IMG/VR virus record: IMGVR_UViG_3300042558_004148 | Location: 124,001-188,000 of that record | Length of the DNA: 64,000 bases | Strand: one strand, 5' to 3' | Shown: piece by piece, positions 1-9,446 of the stretch | How positions within the stretch are numbered: the first letter of the stretch is position 1 | How the letters are laid out: each line of letters begins with the position of its first letter | Made by a program: the position numbers and the translations under genes | Notes under the pieces: generated by a model | What the model was told of the DNA's origin: nothing | The model's database searches: none | The model's input: the letters and a program-made list of their open reading frames with translations, nothing else

Positions 1-291
1 CCTAAAGGATCAAGTAAAGAGGAGAAAAGTTCAAATAAGTTTACTAAGGACGAACTAAAAGCTAAAAAGACTGAAATCCTTAATAAATGGGAAAGGGATA
101 ATATTGGTGATAAAAAAGTTACCGATGCTGATGCTGAAAAGTTCTATAAATCTGGAGTGATCAAGGGTAAAAAATACTTCGGGAAGGATTTTGATCCAGC
201 AAACCCTAAGAATAAGGAAGAGGAAATGTACGCCGATTATATGAATGGTATAATGGAGAGGTATTATAAAAAGACAAGCAATGCACAATAA
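1..291 (+). CDS. hypothetical protein, 3' part (runs off the window)
   Basis: Frame 1 is open from base 1 to TAA at 289-291 (PKGSSKEEK...KTSNAQ*) and overlaps the next ATG; not in the ORF track. Confidence 0.6.
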   Translation, partial: PKGSSKEEKSSNKFTKDELKAKKTEILNKWERDNIGDKKVTDADAEKFYKSGVIKGKKYFGKDFDPANPKNKEEEMYADYMNGIMERYYKKTSNAQ

Positions 292-1204
292 AACGCTATC
301 ATTTAATAACTTTGTAATTTTATTAGAGGGTGGTGCCGCTATTAAAACATCTAGAAGAATAAGGGAGGATGAGTTTGAAGAAACACTAGCCTCAATAAAG
401 AGCATATTGTTGCCGATTATTGGTGTAAATCCCAATTCATCTGCTGGTGAATACATCGTTATTGGAAGCATAGGGAAAAAGAAAAATCCAGATGATACAT
501 CGGGTGATCTTGATCTTGGACTTGATTCTAATTTATTCAATGTGCCACTAAAGGAGGTATCTGGATATATTTATTCGATATTAAGTGGATCGGAAGAGCT
601 AACAAGCAAATTGGGATTCGAACCTGAAATAAATTATTTGAAGGGACTAAATATAGTAAGTATAGGATGGCCTATAAACGGTGATCAAACTAACGGAATT
701 GTACAGCTTGATTTAATACCCGTTGCTGATATGGAATGGGCAAAGTTTATCTACTATTCACCTGACTACAAAACATCTGAAAGTAAATATAAATCAGCTC
801 ATAGAAACTGGTTACTTGCTGCTATATTAGCAATACGTAGAATGGTATTGGATGTTAACGATGCTGGAGAAGTTATGGATTATGATTCACCTGTGCTGAT
901 ATTAAGCGATGGTTTATATTGGCATACTAAATCATACAGAGGCAAACTAAAACCTAGATTAAAGAATGCTGCCAAGATAAGCGGAAGCGAGAGATTTATA
1001 ACTAGAGATCCTCAGGAATTTATAGACTTTGCATTGGGTACAGGTTATTCAATCAATGACGTTAAAACATTCGAAAAGTTATACCAGATTATAGATTCAC
1101 CTAGTTTTGAACTTTATGATAAGGTTGGCGAAATAGAGGAAAAGTTCCTCGAATATATTACTAGAGCAAATTTAGAGAGGCCCTCCGAAATAAAAAGAGC
1201 TTAA
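281..1204 (+). CDS. Pol-beta-superfamily nucleotidyltransferase with N-terminal capsid-targeting-like motif
   Basis: GS..DxD signature (VIGSIGKK...SGDLDL) plus third Asp (VQLDLI); N-terminus KTLSFNNFVILLE. Confidence 0.65.
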   Translation: MHNKTLSFNNFVILLEGGAAIKTSRRIREDEFEETLASIKSILLPIIGVNPNSSAGEYIVIGSIGKKKNPDDTSGDLDLGLDSNLFNVPLKEVSGYIYSILSGSEELTSKLGFEPEINYLKGLNIVSIGWPINGDQTNGIVQLDLIPVADMEWAKFIYYSPDYKTSESKYKSAHRNWLLAAILAIRRMVLDVNDAGEVMDYDSPVLILSDGLYWHTKSYRGKLKPRLKNAAKISGSERFITRDPQEFIDFALGTGYSINDVKTFEKLYQIIDSPSFELYDKVGEIEEKFLEYITRANLERPSEIKRA

Positions 1205-1240
1205 TCTTATATAAATATAAAGATAAAATTAAAATTAAAT

Positions 1241-3322
1241 ATGTCTGGAATTAGCCACTTATATGATATTTACCATAAGAAAGGAAAAGAGTTTATTGAT
1301 AATCTCTTTAGTACTTATGTAACTGTTAATGAAAAAATGGATGGATCTGCTTTTGTTTTCGAAAGAGATGCTAACGATGGTAAATTTGTATTCTATAAGA
1401 GAGATCAGAGAAATCCGATAACAATGGTTGATAGAACCCTTATGAAATATTATGAGAAGCCTATCCAGTATATAGAATCTTTGAGTCCACACACAATAAG
1501 TAAAATCCCAAGAGGATGGAAATTTGGATTGGAATATTTTGCTAATAATAAGCCAGTCGAGATTGCTTACGATAGAATGCCAAAGAATAATCTTATATTG
1601 TCTTACGTTAGTCCTAAGGACTCTAAGCCTTCCAATAATTTTATAAATGACAAGGAGAAATTAGATACCTGGGCAGATCTTTTAGGAGTTGAGAGACCCC
1701 CGATTATTTTTCAAGGATATCTTAGTGAGGATCAGAAAGAAAAAATATCAGATTTTCTACGAACACCATTCGATGATTTGGTATCTGAGTATAAGACTAA
1801 GAGTTTTGTTAGGTATATCATAGGTGTACTAAATCCGGAAGCCAAGGAAAGCGCATTAAACGACGACCTTGATAAGGCCATAGAAGGAATAGTTTTTAAG
1901 TTTGGTGACGAGAAAGGTGAAGGTGAGACTGTTGTGTCAAAGATGGTAGATCCAGTATTTACCGAAATGGCAAAAAATAAAACCAAATTAAAGATTGAAA
2001 ATAAACCTAGTGATTTTCTGGGACTTACTGTTCTGGATGTTATGAATTTTATATTGGAATCTGGGGTTGATTCGTTTAGAATCGATGGAGATTCAGAAGA
2101 TGAGAGGTATATTTCGTTTGTTTCTGATGTATTTTCTAAATTCCTAGACGACTATGGCTATAAATATAAAGGTGCGGATTTTCAGGAACCTGATTATTTA
2201 AAGAAGGACGAATTCAGACTAAACAAGGAACTAATAAGAGATAGAAGAGTACTTAGCTATCTTGAGCAGGATGATTCATATGAATCATTATTTAAGTTAA
2301 TATTGAATTCTTTTAGAAAAATAAAGAAAAGAGCGGGTGGAATAATTACTGCTGGTATAATAAACCAGTTCAATATGCTGGTCTCTGATATACAAAAGGA
2401 AGTAGATAGAAAACAGACCCCAAAAATACAAGAATCCCAATCAGTCCCATCATTTTTTGATTTTAGAAAATCTAATATGTCAACCAAGAAAGTTGATTAT
2501 GTTACGTCTGAGAGTGAAAATGATGATCATAAGGACGATCACTTCTTTTCTTATAATGATTTTATATCAACATTGGAAACTATAGACACCAAGGAAAAGC
2601 CCGATGCTGAACCAATAGAAGAAAAAGATAAATCAGCCGAAAAGAAAGACAAAGAATTGCAGAAAGTAAATTTAATTGTTGGAAGATTTCAACCTTTCCA
2701 TAAAGGTCATCTTAAGATGGCTAATGACCTATTTAAAAAGAATAATCTGCCTTCGATAATAGCAGTAGTTCATCCTGGACATAATAAATCTGGTAAATCT
2801 CCATTTGATACTGATCTAGTTGATAAGTATATGGAATCAGTGGTTAGAGAGAATTCTAAAACTATATCCGGATATTTCATGGTAGATCGAGGATTACTCG
2901 GAATTATATACGGTAAAGCTAAACAGATGGGATACCTTCCCAAATATATAGGATGTGGTGATGATAGAACAGAAGATTACAAGAAGCAAGCAGAATATCT
3001 TAAGAAAGCTGGCGGTGATTTTCCTGATGATATAGAGATCATAGAGACTCCTAGAATCACCAGCGGATCGGAAGTTAGAGATATGATTGATGCGGAGGAT
3101 TTTGTAGCTTTTAAGAAGCTTGTTCCCCCATCAGTAGCATCGTTTTATCAGCAGTTAGTTTCTTCTAAGAAAGGAACCGGCGTTAATGAAGGTTTATCTG
3201 ACGATGAATTATCTGATTCTGAAAAAACGGATAAAACAGAAGTTATTAATTATCTGAATGAATATGGCGATGAGAAAACCATAGATGAGGTTAATAAAGA
3301 AATTAAAAATAACGAAGAATAA
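1241..3322 (+). CDS. fusion of RNA/DNA-ligase-type covalent nucleotidyltransferase and HIGH-family (cytidylyltransferase/NMNAT-like) domain
   Basis: Ligase motifs I EKMDG, III GLEYF, IV EGIVFK, V KMVD; C-terminal GRFQPFHKGH (HxGH) and TSGSEVR; acidic linker between the domains. Confidence 0.7.
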   Translation: MSGISHLYDIYHKKGKEFIDNLFSTYVTVNEKMDGSAFVFERDANDGKFVFYKRDQRNPITMVDRTLMKYYEKPIQYIESLSPHTISKIPRGWKFGLEYFANNKPVEIAYDRMPKNNLILSYVSPKDSKPSNNFINDKEKLDTWADLLGVERPPIIFQGYLSEDQKEKISDFLRTPFDDLVSEYKTKSFVRYIIGVLNPEAKESALNDDLDKAIEGIVFKFGDEKGEGETVVSKMVDPVFTEMAKNKTKLKIENKPSDFLGLTVLDVMNFILESGVDSFRIDGDSEDERYISFVSDVFSKFLDDYGYKYKGADFQEPDYLKKDEFRLNKELIRDRRVLSYLEQDDSYESLFKLILNSFRKIKKRAGGIITAGIINQFNMLVSDIQKEVDRKQTPKIQESQSVPSFFDFRKSNMSTKKVDYVTSESENDDHKDDHFFSYNDFISTLETIDTKEKPDAEPIEEKDKSAEKKDKELQKVNLIVGRFQPFHKGHLKMANDLFKKNNLPSIIAVVHPGHNKSGKSPFDTDLVDKYMESVVRENSKTISGYFMVDRGLLGIIYGKAKQMGYLPKYIGCGDDRTEDYKKQAEYLKKAGGDFPDDIEIIETPRITSGSEVRDMIDAEDFVAFKKLVPPSVASFYQQLVSSKKGTGVNEGLSDDELSDSEKTDKTEVINYLNEYGDEKTIDEVNKEIKNNEE

Positions 3323-3323
3323 A

Positions 3324-3863
3324 ATGACAAAAATTGCAACTTTCGGACAATTTGTAAGTAATATGAATGAGTCTGATGGATTTGGTACTTCCCCATTTCT
3401 AATGAAAAAAAACGGGGATTTATATCATTATTTCTTTAATCTTGATATGGAGAATGAAGAGGTTAGAGGATTCCACCTCATAATCGGGAAATATTCGGAT
3501 CATGGTAATATAGAAGGTGCTAAGAATTCGTATGGTGTACTAACATTAAATGAAATTTCACCGGAAGTAATAGAGGATATCGCTGTAGATAAGGAAGATA
3601 TCCCACAGACAGATAAGAATAAATTTAAGATGGGATCTAACGAGCTATCTAGGCTAATGGAGTATGTTTATAAATGTGTTACTGATTACTTGGAGCTTAA
3701 TTCAAAGGTAACTAGAATATATGACGAGATTCAAGATAATCTCCAGTATGAGGGTAAAGGTACATATATGGAATACATGAAATCTATGTCGGTTTCACAA
3801 TTAGGCGGAAATTGGTCAGTTCAGGAAGGATCTGATAAGAATTCAGTTATTCTTAGCAGATAA
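3324..3863 (+). CDS. hypothetical protein with capsid-targeting-like N-terminus
   Basis: ATG at 3324 right after the upstream stop; MTKIATFGQFVSNMNES. Confidence 0.6.
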   Translation: MTKIATFGQFVSNMNESDGFGTSPFLMKKNGDLYHYFFNLDMENEEVRGFHLIIGKYSDHGNIEGAKNSYGVLTLNEISPEVIEDIAVDKEDIPQTDKNKFKMGSNELSRLMEYVYKCVTDYLELNSKVTRIYDEIQDNLQYEGKGTYMEYMKSMSVSQLGGNWSVQEGSDKNSVILSR

Positions 3864-3914: not shown

Positions 3915-4094
3915 ATGGAAAAATTCGAACAAATTAAAGCTCTTATCGAGCAAACACAAGGTGATGTTGAAAAATTCGCATCTAAAGGAAACGGAGCAGC
4001 TGGTACTAGAGTTAGACAAGCTATGCAAGAACTTAAAAAACTTGCACAGGACTTAAGAGTTGAAGTACAGGAAGCAAAAAACAACAAAGCGTAA
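3915..4094 (+). CDS. histone H1-like (Hc1-family) small DNA-binding protein
   Basis: 59-aa ORF missed by the track: MEKFEQIK...KFASKGNGAAGTRVRQAMQELKKLAQDLR; GNxAAGTRxR motif typical of Hc1-like proteins. Confidence 0.8.
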   Translation: MEKFEQIKALIEQTQGDVEKFASKGNGAAGTRVRQAMQELKKLAQDLRVEVQEAKNNKA

Positions 4095-5012: not shown

Positions 5013-6875
5013 ATGGCTAATAAAATAAAATATAGCGGCTCCTCGCAATCTAATACAATTAAGAAGGGAAATATCCTGATTGGTATAAATAATGTCGATT
5101 ACGCACCAACCTCATCTACTGGTTTCTGGAACGGTATAACTCCAACATATGGTGGATATACGATATATCTAAATAAGACATCCAATGGACCATCGATTTA
5201 TGTTGCTTCCAATGACGCACAATTAATAGATTTAACTAATAAAATCGCGGGTACATCATATACCACGGTGGTGCAGTGTCTTAATTATTTTTCGTCGCAA
5301 TCGGATAGAGTTGTTCTGAATTTCGATTATGAGAATATATTAACGAGCGGGATGGTATTAAATCTGGATTCTGGTTTTTCAGTATCATATCCAACCTCAG
5401 GAACAACAATCTATGACATAAGCTCGGGTAATAATAATGCAACATTGGTAAATGGTATCTCATTTAACCCAAATGGGTCATCGTTTGATGGAGGTGGAAG
5501 TTTAACCTTCGATGGTGTTGACGATCGTGTGGATTTCTATGCACCGAATCTATCTGGTACCGCCAGTGTCGAGATGTGGTGTAAAATAGGATCAGATTAT
5601 AGTAATAGGATGTTCATGGGATGGCAATATTACGACGTATATACTGCGGGTGGATCAATTGGGTATAATACTGGGAATGGTGATGTCTATGGAATATCTC
5701 AATCCACTGTTAACTCATTGGGTATCGTTAACGAATGGGCTCATTATATATTTGAATTTAGGAGTGATGTTGCATATACAAATAATAAGATATATGTTAA
5801 TGGAGTTTCACAGACATTAAGTCAACAGTACTCCGGTGAAGCATCAGGTAACAGAAACTTTAATAGCGGCTACGGTAAGATTGCAACTTGGGGAGGTGGA
5901 GGATATAATATGATCATGGAATGTGCAGTTTTTAGAGTTTATAATAGATCACTAACACAATCAGAGATAACCCAGAATTATAATTCGCAAAAGGGAAGAT
6001 TCCAAAATTTTTATACCAATGGTAACTTTAAATTTTTAACTTCAGGAGGTGCACTCCAGAATTATTCTGGTGGATCTACTAATAGTACGACGACCCTTCC
6101 TGGATATAGTTACTCGTTGCAACTCCCTCAGACACAGTATGGGACATTTACTAGTGATACACCAGTTCAGGTTGATACAACAAAAAAATATAAGGTGACA
6201 GTTAAAAATAGGACTCTCACTAAGGGTGGGCCGGGAGATAATATACTTTCTGGAGGTTATACCGGATTCATGACACTTGATTCAAGCTACAGGTTCATTG
6301 ATCTGAGAATGTGTGGGGGAATTGCTAATACAACTTTGACTAGAAATTTGGTTGCTGGTGATTCATATGCATATGTTTCCAGTGTAAATAATCAATGGGT
6401 AGGTCCAGGTAATACCTATTACTTCAGACATTTTATGATGTACCCACCATCACATCCAGAATTTAATAAACCTTGGGAATATACTAGGATAGGTTATGGT
6501 GATGTGGATCTCTATTATAACGAGATAACTGATATTGGTGGAGGTGAATTGAGATTTAGATTTGCTGATTCTAATAATAATTGGGTTTCTTTCCCTGACA
6601 TAGGTTATCCCACACCAGCTGGTACACCAGTAATGAATGGTGTTGCTGGTGGAACATATAATTATGTATTCTATCCAACAGAAGCTCCTTTTGGTAGCTG
6701 GGGAACACACGAGAGTGGTGTATTTACTGGGGAAAACCGAAATAGCGGTTTGCCTTTTAGATATGGAACAAAATATGTCATGTTTTTGCATTTGATAAAT
6801 TATGCGGTACCTGGTGGAACATCTCCTCTACCAATTATGCTATTTGGTGACATAACATTGGAGGAAGTAAAATAG
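5013..6875 (+). CDS. LamG/concanavalin-A-like domain virion protein (fibre or decoration)
   Basis: LNLDSG...SYP..GT..YDIS...N.TLVNG...FDGVDD...YNRSL...EI.QNYN LamG signature; Gly/Asn/Thr/Ser rich. Confidence 0.75.
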   Translation: MANKIKYSGSSQSNTIKKGNILIGINNVDYAPTSSTGFWNGITPTYGGYTIYLNKTSNGPSIYVASNDAQLIDLTNKIAGTSYTTVVQCLNYFSSQSDRVVLNFDYENILTSGMVLNLDSGFSVSYPTSGTTIYDISSGNNNATLVNGISFNPNGSSFDGGGSLTFDGVDDRVDFYAPNLSGTASVEMWCKIGSDYSNRMFMGWQYYDVYTAGGSIGYNTGNGDVYGISQSTVNSLGIVNEWAHYIFEFRSDVAYTNNKIYVNGVSQTLSQQYSGEASGNRNFNSGYGKIATWGGGGYNMIMECAVFRVYNRSLTQSEITQNYNSQKGRFQNFYTNGNFKFLTSGGALQNYSGGSTNSTTTLPGYSYSLQLPQTQYGTFTSDTPVQVDTTKKYKVTVKNRTLTKGGPGDNILSGGYTGFMTLDSSYRFIDLRMCGGIANTTLTRNLVAGDSYAYVSSVNNQWVGPGNTYYFRHFMMYPPSHPEFNKPWEYTRIGYGDVDLYYNEITDIGGGELRFRFADSNNNWVSFPDIGYPTPAGTPVMNGVAGGTYNYVFYPTEAPFGSWGTHESGVFTGENRNSGLPFRYGTKYVMFLHLINYAVPGGTSPLPIMLFGDITLEEVK

Positions 6876-7160: not shown

Positions 7161-9446
7161 ATGCCAAATTCAATAAAACATTCAACAACTGGTGATACAC
7201 AGTCATTAAAGAAGGGGAATTTCTTTTTTGGTGTGGGTGACGTTGGTAAGGGACCTTCAAGTTCATCTGGTCACTATAATGGAGTAACGCCGATGTCGGG
7301 TGGATACACCATTTATTCATATAACGTAAATGAAACATCCAAGATAAGCTTTCACACTGCGAACAGCGATCTTGAGCTAATATCATACACCAATATTATA
7401 TCAGGTCAGGGTTTCACTACAGCAGTACAATGTTTAAACTGGTATGCAACTCAAACAAATTATGCGTGTGTTAATAAAAATTACGAAGGAATAATTACTG
7501 ATGGTTTGGTCTTTAATGTTGATGCTGGGTTTATACCATCATATCCAACTAACGGCACTGGCTGGTATGATATATCACATAACGGAAATAATGCAACCCT
7601 TGTAAATGGACCGGCTTTTAGTTCCTTGAATGGCGGGTCTATAGTATTCGATGGAGCTGATGATGTTGTTAGTACTAATCTCGTTCAAACATTTACTAAT
7701 GAGCTTACTGTTGATACCTGGTATAGAGGAACTAAAACAACAAGGAATCACTTATGGAATTTCTACGGTAGTAATCTGAACTGTAATTTTAATGATTCAG
7801 GATATAGTCTTTGGATGTATTGGGAGGGTAACGGAGGTAATAGGATCTGGTGGACCTCTCCAAATTTTACTGACGGTAATATACACCATCTAGTATTTAG
7901 ACATTCGGGAAGCGTCAATCAAATTTATTTGGATGGTCAATTATTAACACCAAACCAAACAGCAGGCACGCAAACATTTTCCGGTGTTGGCGGTAGCGGT
8001 TATGATTTAGCTTCGCTTGGACCATTTGGTGGAAATATATATTCCAATAGAGTTTATAGTAGAGCATTATCATCATCAGAAATATTGCAAAACTACAACG
8101 CAGGATTAGCAAGATTTAACACCGCTAATATCGTAAAAAATAATTTGATGTTAAATCTTGATGCGTCCAATGCTATTTCATATCCAACGACTGGTACGAA
8201 GTGGAATGATTTGAGTGGATATGGAAATGTTGGTACATTAGCAAATGGACCAACATTTAACTCCACAACTAGGTCTATCGTATTTGATGGAGCTGATGAC
8301 TACGTATCAGATGGATCATCAACTTATGATATTACAAATCAATTCACAGTGGAAGTTTTATGTAACCCCACTCAAGAATATAATGGAATGTTTAATTTTG
8401 TAGGTCCTAATGGGTCTGATAGAGGAATGATGGCACATTGGCCTTGGGGTGGTGATTATGGATATTTCGATATCACCAATACTTCTAATGCATTTTTTAG
8501 ATGGTATAAAGCAGGTGCCGGAATATTAAACGTAAGAGCATTATATCACTTTATCTTAAACCCTAACGGTCAGGTGGTGGTAAAACAAAACAATCAGATA
8601 ATGACTCCATCCGGTACAGATACTTTTACTGGGAATGTTTCGCTGGGTTCATATAACACTATAGGTGCGTTTAGTTCAGCACAACTTCCCTGGAAAGGAG
8701 AGATGTCTAAATTTAGGGTCTATAATAGGGCATTAACCGATGCAGAGACTACTCAAAACTACTATGGTTCACCTATAATAACGGATGGTTTAATTATGGC
8801 GTTAGATGCTGGTAATTTCGTGTCTTATCCAGGATCAGGAACTACATGGAAAGATTTAACAACTAATGGTACTAATGGTACCTTAACAAACGGAACCACA
8901 TTTAATAGTTCAGATGGTGGAAGTATCGTGTTTGATGGGACTGACGATTATATGGTTGTACCTACATTTTCTAATAAACCAACAACCGCAATTACTTGCG
9001 AAAGTTGGATAAAACCAACTAAACTAACGGTTTCAGGAACGATAAGGGGCGGTGCGATATCTTCATCTAATAGTATGTATTTAGGTATCATTGATTCAAC
9101 GGATGGCGGTAATACGTTCTCAATGCATTGGGCAAACCAAACTAACAATAGTAGGGTATCTAATTGGAATGGTAGTATACCAAACAATTCTTGGTCTTAC
9201 TTAGTTGGTACTTATGACGGCACTATGGCAAGAGCATATCTTAATGGTGTTGAGATATGGTCAACCCCACAAACAGGTACGATACCCGATGCAACTTATT
9301 ATGTTGGAACTTATGGTGGTAGTGTTGTAGATGGGACTCATAATTTTAATGGACATATCCCAATTGCAAGAATATATAACCGAGCGTTAACCCCACAAGA
9401 AATATCACAAAACTATAATGCAGCCAAATCAAGATTTGGTTTATAA
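7161..9446 (+). CDS. triple-LamG domain virion protein
   Basis: Three repeats of (L/V)DA...SYP..G..W.D...NG.TL.NG..F...IVFDG.DD...Y(N/S)RAL...E..QNY; N-terminal ~110 aa shared with 5013..6875. Confidence 0.8.
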   Translation: MPNSIKHSTTGDTQSLKKGNFFFGVGDVGKGPSSSSGHYNGVTPMSGGYTIYSYNVNETSKISFHTANSDLELISYTNIISGQGFTTAVQCLNWYATQTNYACVNKNYEGIITDGLVFNVDAGFIPSYPTNGTGWYDISHNGNNATLVNGPAFSSLNGGSIVFDGADDVVSTNLVQTFTNELTVDTWYRGTKTTRNHLWNFYGSNLNCNFNDSGYSLWMYWEGNGGNRIWWTSPNFTDGNIHHLVFRHSGSVNQIYLDGQLLTPNQTAGTQTFSGVGGSGYDLASLGPFGGNIYSNRVYSRALSSSEILQNYNAGLARFNTANIVKNNLMLNLDASNAISYPTTGTKWNDLSGYGNVGTLANGPTFNSTTRSIVFDGADDYVSDGSSTYDITNQFTVEVLCNPTQEYNGMFNFVGPNGSDRGMMAHWPWGGDYGYFDITNTSNAFFRWYKAGAGILNVRALYHFILNPNGQVVVKQNNQIMTPSGTDTFTGNVSLGSYNTIGAFSSAQLPWKGEMSKFRVYNRALTDAETTQNYYGSPIITDGLIMALDAGNFVSYPGSGTTWKDLTTNGTNGTLTNGTTFNSSDGGSIVFDGTDDYMVVPTFSNKPTTAITCESWIKPTKLTVSGTIRGGAISSSNSMYLGIIDSTDGGNTFSMHWANQTNNSRVSNWNGSIPNNSWSYLVGTYDGTMARAYLNGVEIWSTPQTGTIPDATYYVGTYGGSVVDGTHNFNGHIPIARIYNRALTPQEISQNYNAAKSRFGL

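What the first reader, a model, noticed from the sequence alone, without database searches (positions are those of the whole stretch)
281..3322. Three unrelated nucleotidyl-transfer chemistries in one two-gene locus
Seen: a Pol-beta-type NTase (GS..DLD) lies next to a protein fusing a ligase-type KxDG adenylyltransferase with a HIGH (HKGH) cytidylyl/adenylyltransferase. The acidic linker holds two internal copies of the targeting-like motif (VPSFFDF, FFSYNDF..LE) and xES/xNE sites, suggesting a polyprotein cut during head maturation. Inference: a packaged module for RNA/tRNA end repair, NAD or nucleotide cofactor regeneration against NAD-depleting defences, or synthesis of a signalling nucleotide. 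I cannot assign a substrate, and I know of no characterised function for this architecture.
Basis: partly seen in the sequence, partly recalled or inferred. Interest (0 to 1): 0.7.

Follow-up and report, generated by a model that had tools for sequence, protein, structure and literature searches.

The report
Phage fill-and-seal nucleic-acid repair module
Two adjacent genes of a 373-kb freshwater jumbo phage encode a small polymerase-X-like nucleotidyltransferase and a fusion of an RNA-ligase-like domain with an NMN-adenylyltransferase-like domain. This is a widespread, uncharacterised variant of the known 'nucleotidyltransferase plus RNA ligase' repair pairing, it lies among the replication genes, and nothing indicates a packaged polyprotein.

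Summary
Gene 1 (281-1204) has the Pol-beta motif G62-S63...D76xD78...D144. Its model resembles the palm and thumb of family-X polymerases (ASFV Pol X Z 9.7). Gene 2 (1241-3322) joins an Rnl2-like ligase domain (E31-K32-x-D34-G35, PF09414 just under cut-off) to a HIGH-type adenylyltransferase domain (GRFQPFHKGH...SGSEVR; Z 12-15 to NadD/NMNAT/NadM).

The three activities are linked. Synteny holds in about 70 of 80 related loci. The NTase is fused elsewhere to this HIGH clade and to two other families that carry a KxDG motif. The ligase-HIGH fusion occurs in 114 of 118 distant relatives.

The locus always lies in the replication block (gp32, primase, UvsW ... PolB, RNR). The 'targeting-like' VPSFFDF motif is the conserved C-terminal edge of the ligase-like domain.

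The complete genome already has a DNA ligase, Rnl1 with a phosphoesterase, a canonical Rnl2, a class II CCA enzyme, 33 tRNAs, Nampt and a second NadM-like protein.

Best reading: a fill-in-and-seal module for broken RNA or RNA/DNA ends, analogous to RlaP plus RNA ligase, with an accessory NMNAT-like AMP transferase whose substrate is unresolved.

One unexpected result: a third of the wider family lacks the ligase lysine but keeps the HIGH motifs.

Verdict: new variant of a known kind; moderate interest.

The parts
1..291 (+). 3' part of a conserved 183-aa gene of unknown function ('up183'). Its stop codon overlaps the start of gene 1 by 11 nt.
   Evidence: The full ORF is seen in the identical record L010:4500-5051. 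It is syntenic in about 70 of 80 related loci. No Pfam family above cut-off.
281..1204 (+). Gene 1: a 307-aa Pol-beta-superfamily nucleotidyltransferase with a family-X-like palm and thumb. Catalytic G62-S63 (nt 464-469), D76/D78 (nt 506-514), D144 (nt 710-712).
   Evidence: Motifs invariant and at least 90% conserved in the wide family. AF2 pLDDT 87. ASFV Pol X Z 9.7 with 164 of 176 residues aligned; TdT, Pol beta and Pol lambda Z 8.8-9.5 over residues 21-268. No Pfam, NCBIfam or RlaP match.
1241..2425 (+). Gene 2, residues 1-395: RNA-ligase-like (Rnl2 / PF09414-type) adenylyltransferase domain plus a helical extension. Motif I lysine K32 lies at nt 1334-1336.
   Evidence: PF09414 E 2.4e-5, 25 bits against cut-off 27, profile positions 2-162 of 171. 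26.2 bits (27 with neighbouring stretches in the frame) in the genome search. Motifs I, III, IV and V invariant in the clade. Motif I aligns with T4 Rnl2 EKIHG. ESM Atlas neighbours are RNA ligases. The AF2 model is poor here.
2426..2650 (+). Gene 2, residues 396-470: acidic, mostly disordered linker carrying the conserved motifs IQES..PSFxDF and DxFYSYNEFISxLETID.
   Evidence: pLDDT below 50. Motif 1 is conserved down to 25%-identity homologues that lack the HIGH domain. Motif 2 is kept in relatives of 54% identity or more (F/Y-S-F/Y form in most, degenerate in L047), recognisable in the L085/L088 lineage, and absent from the 48%-identity L081, L089 and L004.
2651..3178 (+). Gene 2, residues 471-646: HIGH-superfamily adenylyltransferase domain, NMNAT/NaMNAT-like. 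H487-x-G-H490 at nt 2699-2710; S608-G-S-E-V-R613 at nt 3062-3079.
   Evidence: PF01467 22.7 bits against cut-off 21. PDB profile hits to archaeal NMNAT 1f9a at E 8e-5, with both motifs aligned. VIA Z 14.9 (NadD), 13.7 (1f9a), 11.9 (NadM, NadR) over residues 473-646. NCBIfam NMNAT models reach only 28 bits against cut-offs of 127-181.
3179..3322 (+). Gene 2 acidic C-terminal tail (residues 647-693) and stop codon.
   Evidence: Variable in length and sequence among homologues; low pLDDT.
3324..3863 (+). Conserved 179-aa downstream gene ('d192'; the longer ORF starts at 3285) of unknown function. It begins 1 nt after the gene 2 stop.
   Evidence: Syntenic in most related loci. It lies in one open frame with gene 2 in L039, L059 and L071. 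No informative family or Atlas match.

Best explanation
The locus is a nucleic-acid end-repair ('fill in, then seal') module belonging to the replication/repair gene block of a T4-like freshwater jumbo phage.

Proposed mechanism:
- Gene 1 is a minimal polymerase-X-like nucleotidyltransferase. It would add the missing nucleotide(s) to a 3'-OH at a break or gap.
- The N-terminal domain of gene 2 is an Rnl2-type ligase. It would self-adenylylate on K32, transfer AMP to the 5'-phosphate and seal the nick. The most likely substrate is RNA or an RNA/DNA hybrid.
- The C-terminal domain of gene 2 is an NMN-adenylyltransferase-like enzyme that transfers AMP from ATP to the 5'-phosphate of a nucleotide. 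Its substrate could be free NMN, giving NAD+ together with the phage's own Nampt, or the 5'-phosphorylated end itself.

Shown: the three folds and their catalytic residues, their evolutionary linkage, and the genomic setting.

Inferred: the substrates, the order of the reactions, and the role of the HIGH domain.
For: Folds and motifs.

Linkage of the three activities:
- The gene order up183, NTase, ligase-HIGH, d192 is kept in about 70 of 80 IMG/VR loci of 43-100% identity.
- NTase homologues are fused to the same HIGH clade (P0266, P0293, P0298 at E 1e-22 to 1e-24; P0243 also carries Nudix). They are also fused to two other families that carry a ligase-type KxDG motif: DUF6267 in P0275, P0280 and P0307, and the 'u430' family in P0290.
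- Unfused but neighbouring arrangements occur in independent lineages: HIGH, 143 aa, NTase ... ligase-HIGH in L118; HIGH, 355 aa, NTase in L120; Metallophos, NTase, 474 aa, RNA_ligase on the P0274 contig.
- The NTase is present once in all 7 related records of at least 90% completeness (plus G001) whose ligase lysine is intact. It is absent from the whole 462-kb record LR756500, where that lysine is Asn.

Setting: gp32, primase and UvsW upstream; PolB, RNR and topoisomerase II downstream. This holds here and in relatives of 30-45% identity.

The phage has a separate DNA ligase, so the Rnl2-like domain is not the replicative ligase.

[quoted passage not shown] The genome has no PF10127 RlaP, so gene 1 could fill that role.

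NAD link: a bona fide Nampt is encoded in the complete genome (E 1e-116 to solved Nampt). Nampt is present in 6 of 8 complete or near-complete genomes that carry the module.
Against: - No biochemical data exist for any member of these families.
- The ligase-domain fold rests on a sub-threshold Pfam hit, the motifs and language-model neighbours. The AF2 model of that domain is poor and profile searches of the PDB found nothing.
- In about 40 of 118 distant ligase-HIGH proteins the catalytic lysine is Q, N, M or R, and motifs III-V also decay. Classical ligation therefore cannot be the ancestral or universal function of the fusion.
- The phage already has Rnl1 with a phosphoesterase, a canonical Rnl2 and a CCA-adding enzyme. 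A further RNA repair pathway needs a distinct substrate.
- The NTase resembles DNA polymerases rather than RNA-specific NTases, so the substrate could be DNA rather than RNA.
- For the NAD reading: Nampt lies 113 kb away. A second, somewhat better NadM-like candidate exists (P0390). Two complete genomes, G002 and G006, have the module but no Nampt. NMNAT equivalog cut-offs are missed by a wide margin.
Confidence: 0.5

Rival explanations
1. NAD+ reconstitution. The HIGH domain is the phage's NMN adenylyltransferase. It works with the phage Nampt (a NARP2-like pathway) to rebuild NAD+ against NAD-depleting defences. The ligase-like domain and the NTase are accessory or regulatory.
For: - The closest sequence and structure relatives are NMNAT, NaMNAT, NadM and NadR.
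- Nampt is present in the complete genome and in 6 of 8 complete genomes that carry the module.
- Phage NadM always co-occurs with NadV (PMC9503650, section 3.6), and 94% of phages with Nampt have an Nmnat (bioRxiv 10.1101/2024.02.11.579819).
- One distant fusion protein (P0243) joins NTase, HIGH and Nudix.
Against: - Two complete genomes have the module without Nampt.
- A separate NadM-like protein, P0390, scores better against NadM models (36 bits against 28) and sits next to a P-loop kinase.
- Gene 2 has no Nudix domain.
- This HIGH clade is tied to ligase-like and Pol-X-like domains and to the replication block, not to Nampt. Nampt is 113 kb away.
- This reading does not explain the NTase or the ligase domain.
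Confidence: 0.3
2. Bipartite ligase. The NMNAT-like domain directly adenylylates the 5'-phosphate end (ATP + 5'-P-N gives A5'pp5'N + PPi, the same chemistry as NMN to NAD+). The ligase-fold domain then only joins the strands.
For: - About a third of the wider family has lost the ligase lysine while keeping RQP[HT]xGH...S[AG][ST]xxR.
- In the fused proteins inspected in detail, at least one of the two AMP-transfer centres looks intact: HIGH is dead only where the lysine is kept (L081), and the lysine is lost where a T/NxGH motif is kept (L004, L085, L088).
- From general knowledge: lysine mutants of T4 Rnl2 still seal pre-adenylylated ends.
Against: - No HIGH-family enzyme is known to adenylylate a polynucleotide end.
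- The window's own clade keeps every ligase motif, so it does not need this route.
- The complementary pattern rests on a few lineages.
Confidence: 0.12
3. DNA repair in the strict sense: a Pol X plus ligase short-patch gap-filling pair, like the ASFV Pol X / ligase base-excision repair or bacterial LigD, acting on phage DNA during replication and recombination.
For: - The NTase is closest to family-X DNA polymerases, including the thumb.
- Some structural relatives carry Pfam DNA_pol_B_palm.
- The locus lies between UvsW/gp32/primase and PolB.
- An HhH-GPD glycosylase-like gene lies nearby in L122.
Against: - The ligase domain matches the RNA-ligase family, not PF01068.
- A separate T4-type DNA ligase exists.
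- The NTase has no 8-kDa lyase or DNA-binding helix-hairpin-helix domain.
Confidence: 0.2
4. Packaged polyprotein. Gene 2 is cut in its linker by the prohead protease, and the enzymes are injected with the DNA.
For: - The linker is disordered and acidic and holds conserved I-Q-E-S and L-E-T strings.
- LamG-type putative virion proteins lie 1.7 kb downstream.
Against: - The genomic placement is with replication genes in all relatives.
- The 'targeting' motif is a domain edge conserved in stand-alone homologues.
- There is no N-terminal targeting peptide.
- No proteomic data exist.
Confidence: 0.04
5. tRNA maturation or signalling. Gene 1 is a CCA-adding or tailing enzyme for the 33 phage tRNAs, or a CD-NTase-like signal synthase.
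For: - None of the 33 phage tRNA genes is followed by an encoded CCA in the genome sequence.
- Archaeal class I CCA enzymes and CD-NTases share the palm.
Against: - The genome has its own class II CCA-adding enzyme.
- CCA enzymes and CD-NTases align only over about 95-105 palm residues at Z 5-6.4, against Z 9-10 over palm and thumb for Pol X.
Confidence: 0.05

Closest known systems
[quoted passage not shown]
   Same: A Pol-beta-superfamily NTase is genomically coupled to RNA-ligase-family proteins. The predicted logic is to restore lost nucleotides and then ligate. It occurs in large phages with many tRNAs.
   Different: Gene 1 does not match PF10127. It has a family-X-like thumb. The partner ligase is fused to a HIGH adenylyltransferase. 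The locus sits in the replication block rather than in a recognisable RNA-repair operon.
Minimal family-X polymerase plus ligase repair pairs (ASFV Pol X with ASFV ligase; functionally also bacterial LigD)
   Same: Palm-plus-thumb-only architecture. ASFV Pol X is the best structural match (Z 9.7, 164 of 176 residues). The pairing of a small gap-filling NTase with a ligase is shared.
   Different: Sequence identity is only 11-16%. No PolX Pfam model matches gene 1. The ligase partner is RNA-ligase-like. Template dependence is untested.
T4 RNA ligase 2 (Rnl2, PF09414)
   Same: Motif I E-K-x-[DH]-G is in register with T4 Rnl2 EKIHG. Equivalents of motifs III, IV and V are present.
   Different: The score is just below the Pfam cut-off. 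There is no T4_Rnl2_C domain; a different helical extension of about 150 aa follows instead. It is fused to a HIGH domain. The lysine is lost in many relatives. The phage has a canonical Rnl2 elsewhere.
NadM / archaeal NMNAT, and the phage NAD+ salvage pathway NadV + NatV of Vibrio phage KVP40 (NARP2)
   Same: GRFQPFHxGH and SGTxVR-type motifs, the same fold including the C-terminal subdomain, and Nampt in the same genome.
   Different: No Nudix domain. Far below the equivalog cut-offs. Not adjacent to Nampt. Fused to a ligase-like domain. Retained in two complete genomes without Nampt.

Membership tests
Family X DNA polymerases (Pol beta / lambda / ASFV Pol X) | Pol-beta palm with hG[GS] and three catalytic carboxylates | tested here: met
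   G62-S63, D76, D78 and D144 are invariant and at least 90% conserved in 65 distant relatives.
Family X DNA polymerases (Pol beta / lambda / ASFV Pol X) | Thumb (nucleotide-selection) subdomain following the palm | tested here: inconclusive
   The top 8 VIA matches are all Pol X enzymes, aligned over residues 21-274 at Z 8.8-9.7, while other NTases align over the palm only. However, TM scores are about 0.4 and Foldseek E-values are 1e-3 to 1e-2.
Family X DNA polymerases (Pol beta / lambda / ASFV Pol X) | Match to the PolX sequence models; 8-kDa / HhH DNA-binding domains | tested here: not met
   No Pfam or NCBIfam family at E up to 1 or 0.1. Only about 25 residues precede the palm. ASFV Pol X also lacks these domains.
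Family X DNA polymerases (Pol beta / lambda / ASFV Pol X) | Template-directed DNA synthesis | not testable with these tools
   Needs an enzyme assay.
RlaP (PF10127) | Match to the family model | tested here: not met
   No hit for gene 1 and none anywhere in the complete genome at E up to 0.1.
RlaP (PF10127) | Genomic association with RNA-ligase-family genes | tested here: met
   Adjacency in about 70 of 80 loci. The P0274 contig has Metallophos, NTase and RNA_ligase. The NTase is fused to KxDG-bearing families.
Rnl2-type RNA ligase (PF09414) | Match to the family model above its cut-off | tested here: inconclusive
   25.0 bits against 27 for the protein. 26.2 bits in the six-frame search, or 27 with neighbouring stretches in the frame, which the tool counts as over the cut-off. 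One close homologue, P0114, carries a precomputed PF09414 hit.
Rnl2-type RNA ligase (PF09414) | Covalent nucleotidyltransferase motifs I (KxDG), III, IV and V | tested here: met
   K32, D34, G35, E98, E215, G216 and K234 are invariant in 30 homologues. They are not conserved across the wider family.
Rnl2-type RNA ligase (PF09414) | Ligase nucleotidyltransferase fold | tested here: inconclusive
   AF2 pLDDT is 30-55 over residues 1-395. No PDB profile hit. ESM Atlas: 61 of 100 feature neighbours and several structure neighbours are RNA ligases.
Rnl2-type RNA ligase (PF09414) | T4 Rnl2 C-terminal domain (PF18043) | tested here: not met
   No match.
NadM / archaeal NMN adenylyltransferase | (H/T)xGH and SxTxxR motifs, and the HIGH Rossmann fold with its C-terminal helical subdomain | tested here: met
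   Both motifs align with 1f9a and 1ej2. Z 13.7 (1f9a), 11.9 (NadM 2qjo, 2qjt) and 11.8 (NadR) over residues 473-646.
NadM / archaeal NMN adenylyltransferase | Score above the curated equivalog or subfamily cut-offs | tested here: not met
   28 bits against cut-off 127 (NF002243), 21 against 181 (TIGR01527), 17 against 397 (NadM-Nudix). Only the generic cyt_tran_rel domain passes.
NadM / archaeal NMN adenylyltransferase | NMN as substrate | not testable with these tools
   NaMNAT, PPAT and NMNAT match about equally well by fold.
NARP2 (Nampt + NMNAT phage NAD+ reconstitution) | Nampt and an NMNAT encoded by the same phage | tested here: inconclusive
   Nampt is present in G001 and in 6 of 8 complete genomes carrying the module. 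It is absent from the complete genomes G002 and G006. A second NadM-like candidate, P0390, exists.
Capsid-packaged, protease-processed internal proteins | Encoded with head genes; carry a targeting peptide; cleaved by the prohead protease | tested here: not met
   The gene lies in the replication block in all relatives. The proposed motif is a conserved domain edge. Cleavage itself cannot be tested here.

The most novel reading that the evidence does not exclude
The ligase-HIGH fusion is a two-centre ligase. The NMNAT-like domain makes the A5'pp5'N intermediate directly on a 5'-phosphorylated nucleic-acid end, which is the same chemistry as NMN + ATP to NAD+. The ligase-fold domain then only closes the phosphodiester bond. 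This would explain why the ligase lysine is dispensable in a third of the family while the HIGH motifs persist. The Pol-X-like NTase would prepare the 3' end.
Probability: 0.12. Interest if true: 0.85.

Novelty: new variant of a known kind. Interest (0 to 1): 0.55.

Why it matters
Hundreds of metagenomic clusters from lake, estuary and marine phages, including megaphages, carry this ligase-HIGH fusion. Databases label it only 'cytidyltransferase-like' or 'hypothetical'. The Pol-X-like NTase has no Pfam family at all.

If the module is a repair pathway, it adds a third kind of RNA or RNA/DNA end repair to large phages, and it ties that repair to AMP or NAD chemistry. That would be relevant to how phages survive anticodon nucleases and NAD-depleting defences.

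The decay of the ligase lysine alongside retention of the HIGH centre gives a directly testable question: can an NMNAT-like enzyme activate polynucleotide 5' ends? Small, thumb-bearing Pol-X-like enzymes and unusual ligases are also of practical interest as reagents.

Tried and rejected
- AF2 of the whole gene 2 protein gave an unusable N-terminal domain (pLDDT 30-55).
- Profile searches of the PDB with A2 and A3 found nothing for residues 1-395.
- hhalign against a single T4 Rnl2 sequence put motif I in register, but at negligible probability.
- Complex prediction of gene 1 with gene 2 gave no verdict (score 0.00). This is not evidence either way.
- DUF6267 and the 'u430' family carry KIDGAP and TEKxDGQ strings. 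hhalign to the ligase domain (E about 0.1), the PDB and the Atlas did not establish that they are ligases. They are treated as leads only.
- The 350-500-aa C-terminal extensions of about 37 relatives, the 355- and 388-aa neighbours in L120, up183 and d192 gave no family.
- A link through Tpt1/KptA (NAD-dependent 2'-phosphate removal) was rejected, because the genome has no PF01885.
- An NAD-dependent LigA partner was rejected, because the genome has no PF01653.
- A CCA-adding role was rejected.
- A CD-NTase role was rejected.
- Metatranscriptome contigs from one estuary sample cover only about 160-nt pieces of genes 1 and 2. That is too little to claim transcription or operon structure.

Full report
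**What the window is.** The window is the reverse strand of positions 29160-93159 of a 218-kb IMG/VR record. That record is 100% identical over 217 kb to a complete 373,485-bp genome with direct terminal repeats, called G001 here. GC content is 34%. Near-identical DNA occurs in many lake-water metagenomes and in estuary samples. The RNR is closest to those of Tenacibaculum and Cellulophaga phages. An Hc1-type histone-like gene lies just downstream, so a Bacteroidota host is likely. The replication genes are T4-like: gp32, primase, UvsW, PolB, RNR and topoisomerase II.

**The observation.** ORFs lie at 281-1204 (307 aa) and 1241-3322 (693 aa) on the + strand.

- Gene 1 overlaps the stop of a conserved upstream 183-aa gene by 11 nt.
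- A conserved 179-aa gene starts 1 nt after the gene 2 stop. The four genes look co-translated.
They are invariant among homologues of 60-92% identity: GS...DLD plus D144 in gene 1; EKMDG, E98, EG215-216 and K234, together with GRFQPFHKGH and SGSEVR, in gene 2.

**Gene 1.**

- No Pfam, PHROG or NCBIfam family matches it.
- An exhaustive HMMER search found 526 clusters of relatives. The catalytic Asp triad is at least 90% conserved across 65 of them at 25-69% identity.
- The AlphaFold model is confident (pLDDT 87).
- In an all-against-PDB structural search the eight best matches are all family-X polymerases: ASFV Pol X Z 9.7 with 164 of its 176 residues aligned, then TdT, Pol beta, Pol lambda and Thermus PolX at Z 8.8-9.5. 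These cover both palm and thumb (model residues 21-274).
- TUTases, OAS/cGAS-like enzymes, CD-NTases and CCA-adding enzymes align only over about 100 palm residues at Z 5-8. Foldseek agrees.
- In the ESM Atlas the same fold (TM 0.6-0.87) occurs fused to DUF6267, to CTP_transf_like and to a PD-(D/E)xK nuclease. A few relatives carry Pfam DNA_pol_B_palm.
- Gene 1 is therefore a minimal, Pol-X-like member of the Pol-beta superfamily. It does not match RlaP (PF10127), and the complete genome holds no RlaP.

**Gene 2, C-terminal domain (residues 471-646).**

- PF01467 is above its cut-off.
- A family profile hits archaeal NMNATs in the PDB, with both the HxGH and the SGTxxR motifs aligned.
- The domain model is good (pLDDT about 80-87). 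Its best structural matches are pyridine-nucleotide adenylyltransferases over the full domain: NadD Z 14.9, M. jannaschii NMNAT 13.7, NadM 11.9, NadR 11.8. Cytidylyltransferases cover only the core.
- NCBIfam NMNAT models match only the N-terminal motif region, at scores far below their cut-offs.
- It is an NMNAT-like HIGH adenylyltransferase, but substrate specificity is not established.

**Gene 2, N-terminal domain (residues 1-395).**

- PF09414 (RNA_ligase) matches profile positions 2-162 of 171 at 25 bits against a cut-off of 27, in all six close homologues tested. In the six-frame genome search it scores 26.2 bits (27 with neighbouring stretches in the frame), which the tool counts as over the cut-off.
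- Motif I aligns with EKIHG of T4 Rnl2.
- ESM Atlas neighbours, by features and by shape, are mostly RNA ligases.
- The AF2 model is unusable here and PDB profile searches find nothing.
- I accept 'RNA-ligase-like' as probable, not proven.

**The linker.** Residues 396-470 are disordered and acidic.

- The 'VPSFFDF' string is the conserved [SG]F.DF C-terminal edge of the ligase-like domain. It is present in megaphage homologues of 25-38% identity, including stand-alone ones without a linker or HIGH domain.
- The second string (FYSYNEFIS.LETID) is kept in relatives of 54% identity or more (degenerate in L047), is recognisable in L085/L088, and is absent from the 48%-identity L081, L089 and L004.
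- Nothing identifies either string as a capsid-targeting signal.

**Are the three activities linked?** Yes, on several independent lines.

1. Synteny. Among 80 IMG/VR loci of 43-100% identity, the order up183, NTase, ligase-HIGH, d192 and four small genes is kept in about 70. In three loci d192 is in frame with gene 2.
2. Fusions of the NTase.
   - Distant NTase homologues are fused to the same HIGH clade: P0266, P0293 and P0298 at E 1e-22 to 1e-24. P0243 has three NTase copies plus HIGH and Nudix.
   - They are also fused to DUF6267 (P0275, P0280, P0307).
   - They are also fused to a 430-aa family, 'u430' (P0290).
   - Both of these partner families carry a ligase-type KxDG string. That is only a lead.
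3. Unfused neighbours recur in other lineages: HIGH, 143 aa, NTase ... ligase-HIGH in L118; Hc1, HIGH, 355 aa, NTase in L120/L121; Metallophos, NTase, 474 aa, RNA_ligase on the P0274 contig.
4. The ligase-HIGH fusion itself is old. 114 of 118 distant relatives (about 30-45% identity to the query profile) have both domains.
5. The genomic position is conserved: gp32, primase, UvsW, a roughly 190-aa gene, gene X, ligase-HIGH ... Hc1 ... PolB, RNR. X is the NTase in L125, as in the window, or u430 in L123 and L124. u430 also lies directly upstream of the fusion in L004. In L122 two small unassigned genes occupy the slot.
6. Presence and absence. The NTase is present once in all 7 related records of at least 90% completeness (plus G001), whose ligase lysine is intact where examined. 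It is absent from the entire 462-kb LR756500 record, whose ligase lysine is Asn.

**An unexpected pattern.** Across the 118 distant ligase-HIGH proteins the HIGH motifs (RQP[HT]xGH...S[AG][ST]xxR) are kept in the great majority. The ligase lysine is replaced by Q, N, M or R in about 40 of them, and motifs III, IV and V also drift. In the lineages examined in detail, HIGH is dead only where the lysine is kept (L081), and the lysine is lost where a T/NxGH motif is kept (L004, L085, L088). The window's own large clade (54% identity or more) keeps everything. So the HIGH centre is the constant catalytic element of the family. The ligase-fold domain is either a true ligase, as here, or in other lineages a lysine-less module.

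**Genome context that constrains function.** The complete genome also encodes:

- a T4-type DNA ligase;
- no LigA and no Tpt1;
- an Rnl1 followed by a Metallophos phosphoesterase, and a canonical Rnl2 at 93.7 bits;
- a class II CCA-adding-type enzyme;
- 33 tRNA genes, none followed by an encoded CCA;
- a Nudix protein;
- a bona fide Nampt, E 1e-116 to solved Nampt structures;
- a second small NadM-like HIGH protein, P0390 (GRWQPLHPGH...ISATAVR), next to an APS-kinase-like P-loop kinase.

Nampt is found in 6 of 8 complete or near-complete genomes carrying the module. It is missing from two complete ones, G002 and G006.

**Interpretation.** The best-supported reading is a fill-in-and-seal repair module for broken nucleic-acid ends. 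It is analogous to the RlaP plus RNA-ligase pairing that comparative genomics has already described for jumbo phages (PMC7824862, section 3.4.9; PMC9503650, section 3.7.3). It is built from a different, Pol-X-like NTase and a divergent Rnl2-like ligase.

- Its fixed place beside UvsW, gp32 and primase, together with the DNA-polymerase-like NTase, leaves open whether the substrate is RNA, an RNA/DNA hybrid nick (the substrate T4 Rnl2 prefers, from general knowledge) or DNA.
- The role of the HIGH domain is the weakest link. It may make NAD+ with the phage Nampt (NARP2-like; bioRxiv 10.1101/2024.02.11.579819). It may instead act on the 5'-phosphorylated end itself.
- NMN to NAD+ and 5'-P-RNA to AppRNA are the same reaction type, which makes the second possibility chemically reasonable. 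It would also explain the dispensable lysine. It has no precedent.
- The packaged-polyprotein, CCA-adding and signalling-nucleotide readings are not supported.

**Novelty.** I found no paper describing a ligase-NMNAT-like fusion or a phage Pol-X-like NTase family. Database names are only 'cytidyltransferase-like' or 'hypothetical'. The individual folds, and the NTase-plus-RNA-ligase logic, are known. I therefore rate it a new variant of a known kind, of moderate interest. The lysine/HIGH pattern is the part most worth an experiment.

Noticed in passing
window 3915-4094 (+): A 59-aa protein with the Bacteroidota-type histone-H1-like (Hc1, PF07432) signature. Orthologous small genes in relatives are annotated Hc1. 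This hints at a Bacteroidota host.
   Followed up: partly
window 5013-6875 and 7161-9446 (+): Two large repeat-rich proteins match phrog_24074 and phrog_8510 ('virion structural protein'). They are LamG/lectin-like and lie directly downstream of the small-gene cluster. They are present only in the closest relatives.
   Followed up: no
G001 (complete genome of the same phage), 303-335 kb; loci L107-L108: A cluster of 33 tRNA genes, none followed by an encoded 3'-CCA. ARAGORN also makes one odd call with a two-base anticodon at 330202-330272. A class II CCA-adding-type gene lies at 218.3 kb.
   Followed up: partly
G001 about 6.9-7.8 kb (= L003:1294-2117, - strand): A 134-aa NadM-like HIGH protein (GRWQPLHPGH...ISATAVR) is translationally coupled to a 148-aa APS-kinase-like P-loop kinase. 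This may be a split NadR-like NAD salvage pair, which would compete with gene 2 for the role of Nampt partner.
   Followed up: partly
G001 201.2-203.0 kb (L114): An Rnl1-type RNA ligase (PF09511) is immediately followed by a Metallophos phosphoesterase. A canonical Rnl2 lies at 210.9 kb. The phage therefore carries four ligase-superfamily genes in all.
   Followed up: partly
L123:6705-7997, L124:6702-7994, L004:2704-3966: A 420-430-aa phage family ('u430') with N-terminal EGGAxGHMxHPFDD and a TEKxDGQ string occupies the slot of the NTase upstream of ligase-HIGH. It is fused to the NTase in P0290. It may be another ligase-like enzyme, and it has no Pfam family.
   Followed up: partly
P0280:530-897, P0275, P0307: Pfam DUF6267, a phage-only family of unknown function, carries a conserved S-x-K-I-D-G-A-P string about 40 residues into the domain and is fused to the Pol-X-like NTase. 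It may be a covalent nucleotidyltransferase.
   Followed up: partly
L122:4200-5228: The UvsW-like helicase of one relative carries Hint / intein-splicing domains, i.e. an intein inserted in the helicase.
   Followed up: no
G000 212.9-217.9 kb against G001 2-4 kb and 371.9-373.5 kb: Arrays of about 75-85% identical repeats lie at the genome ends, inside or next to the terminal repeats (BLAST).
   Followed up: no
P0405, P0422-P0467 (about 37 proteins): Many distant ligase-HIGH proteins carry an extra 350-500-aa C-terminal region with no detectable family. It is unrelated to d192 or the NTase at the sequence level.
   Followed up: partly
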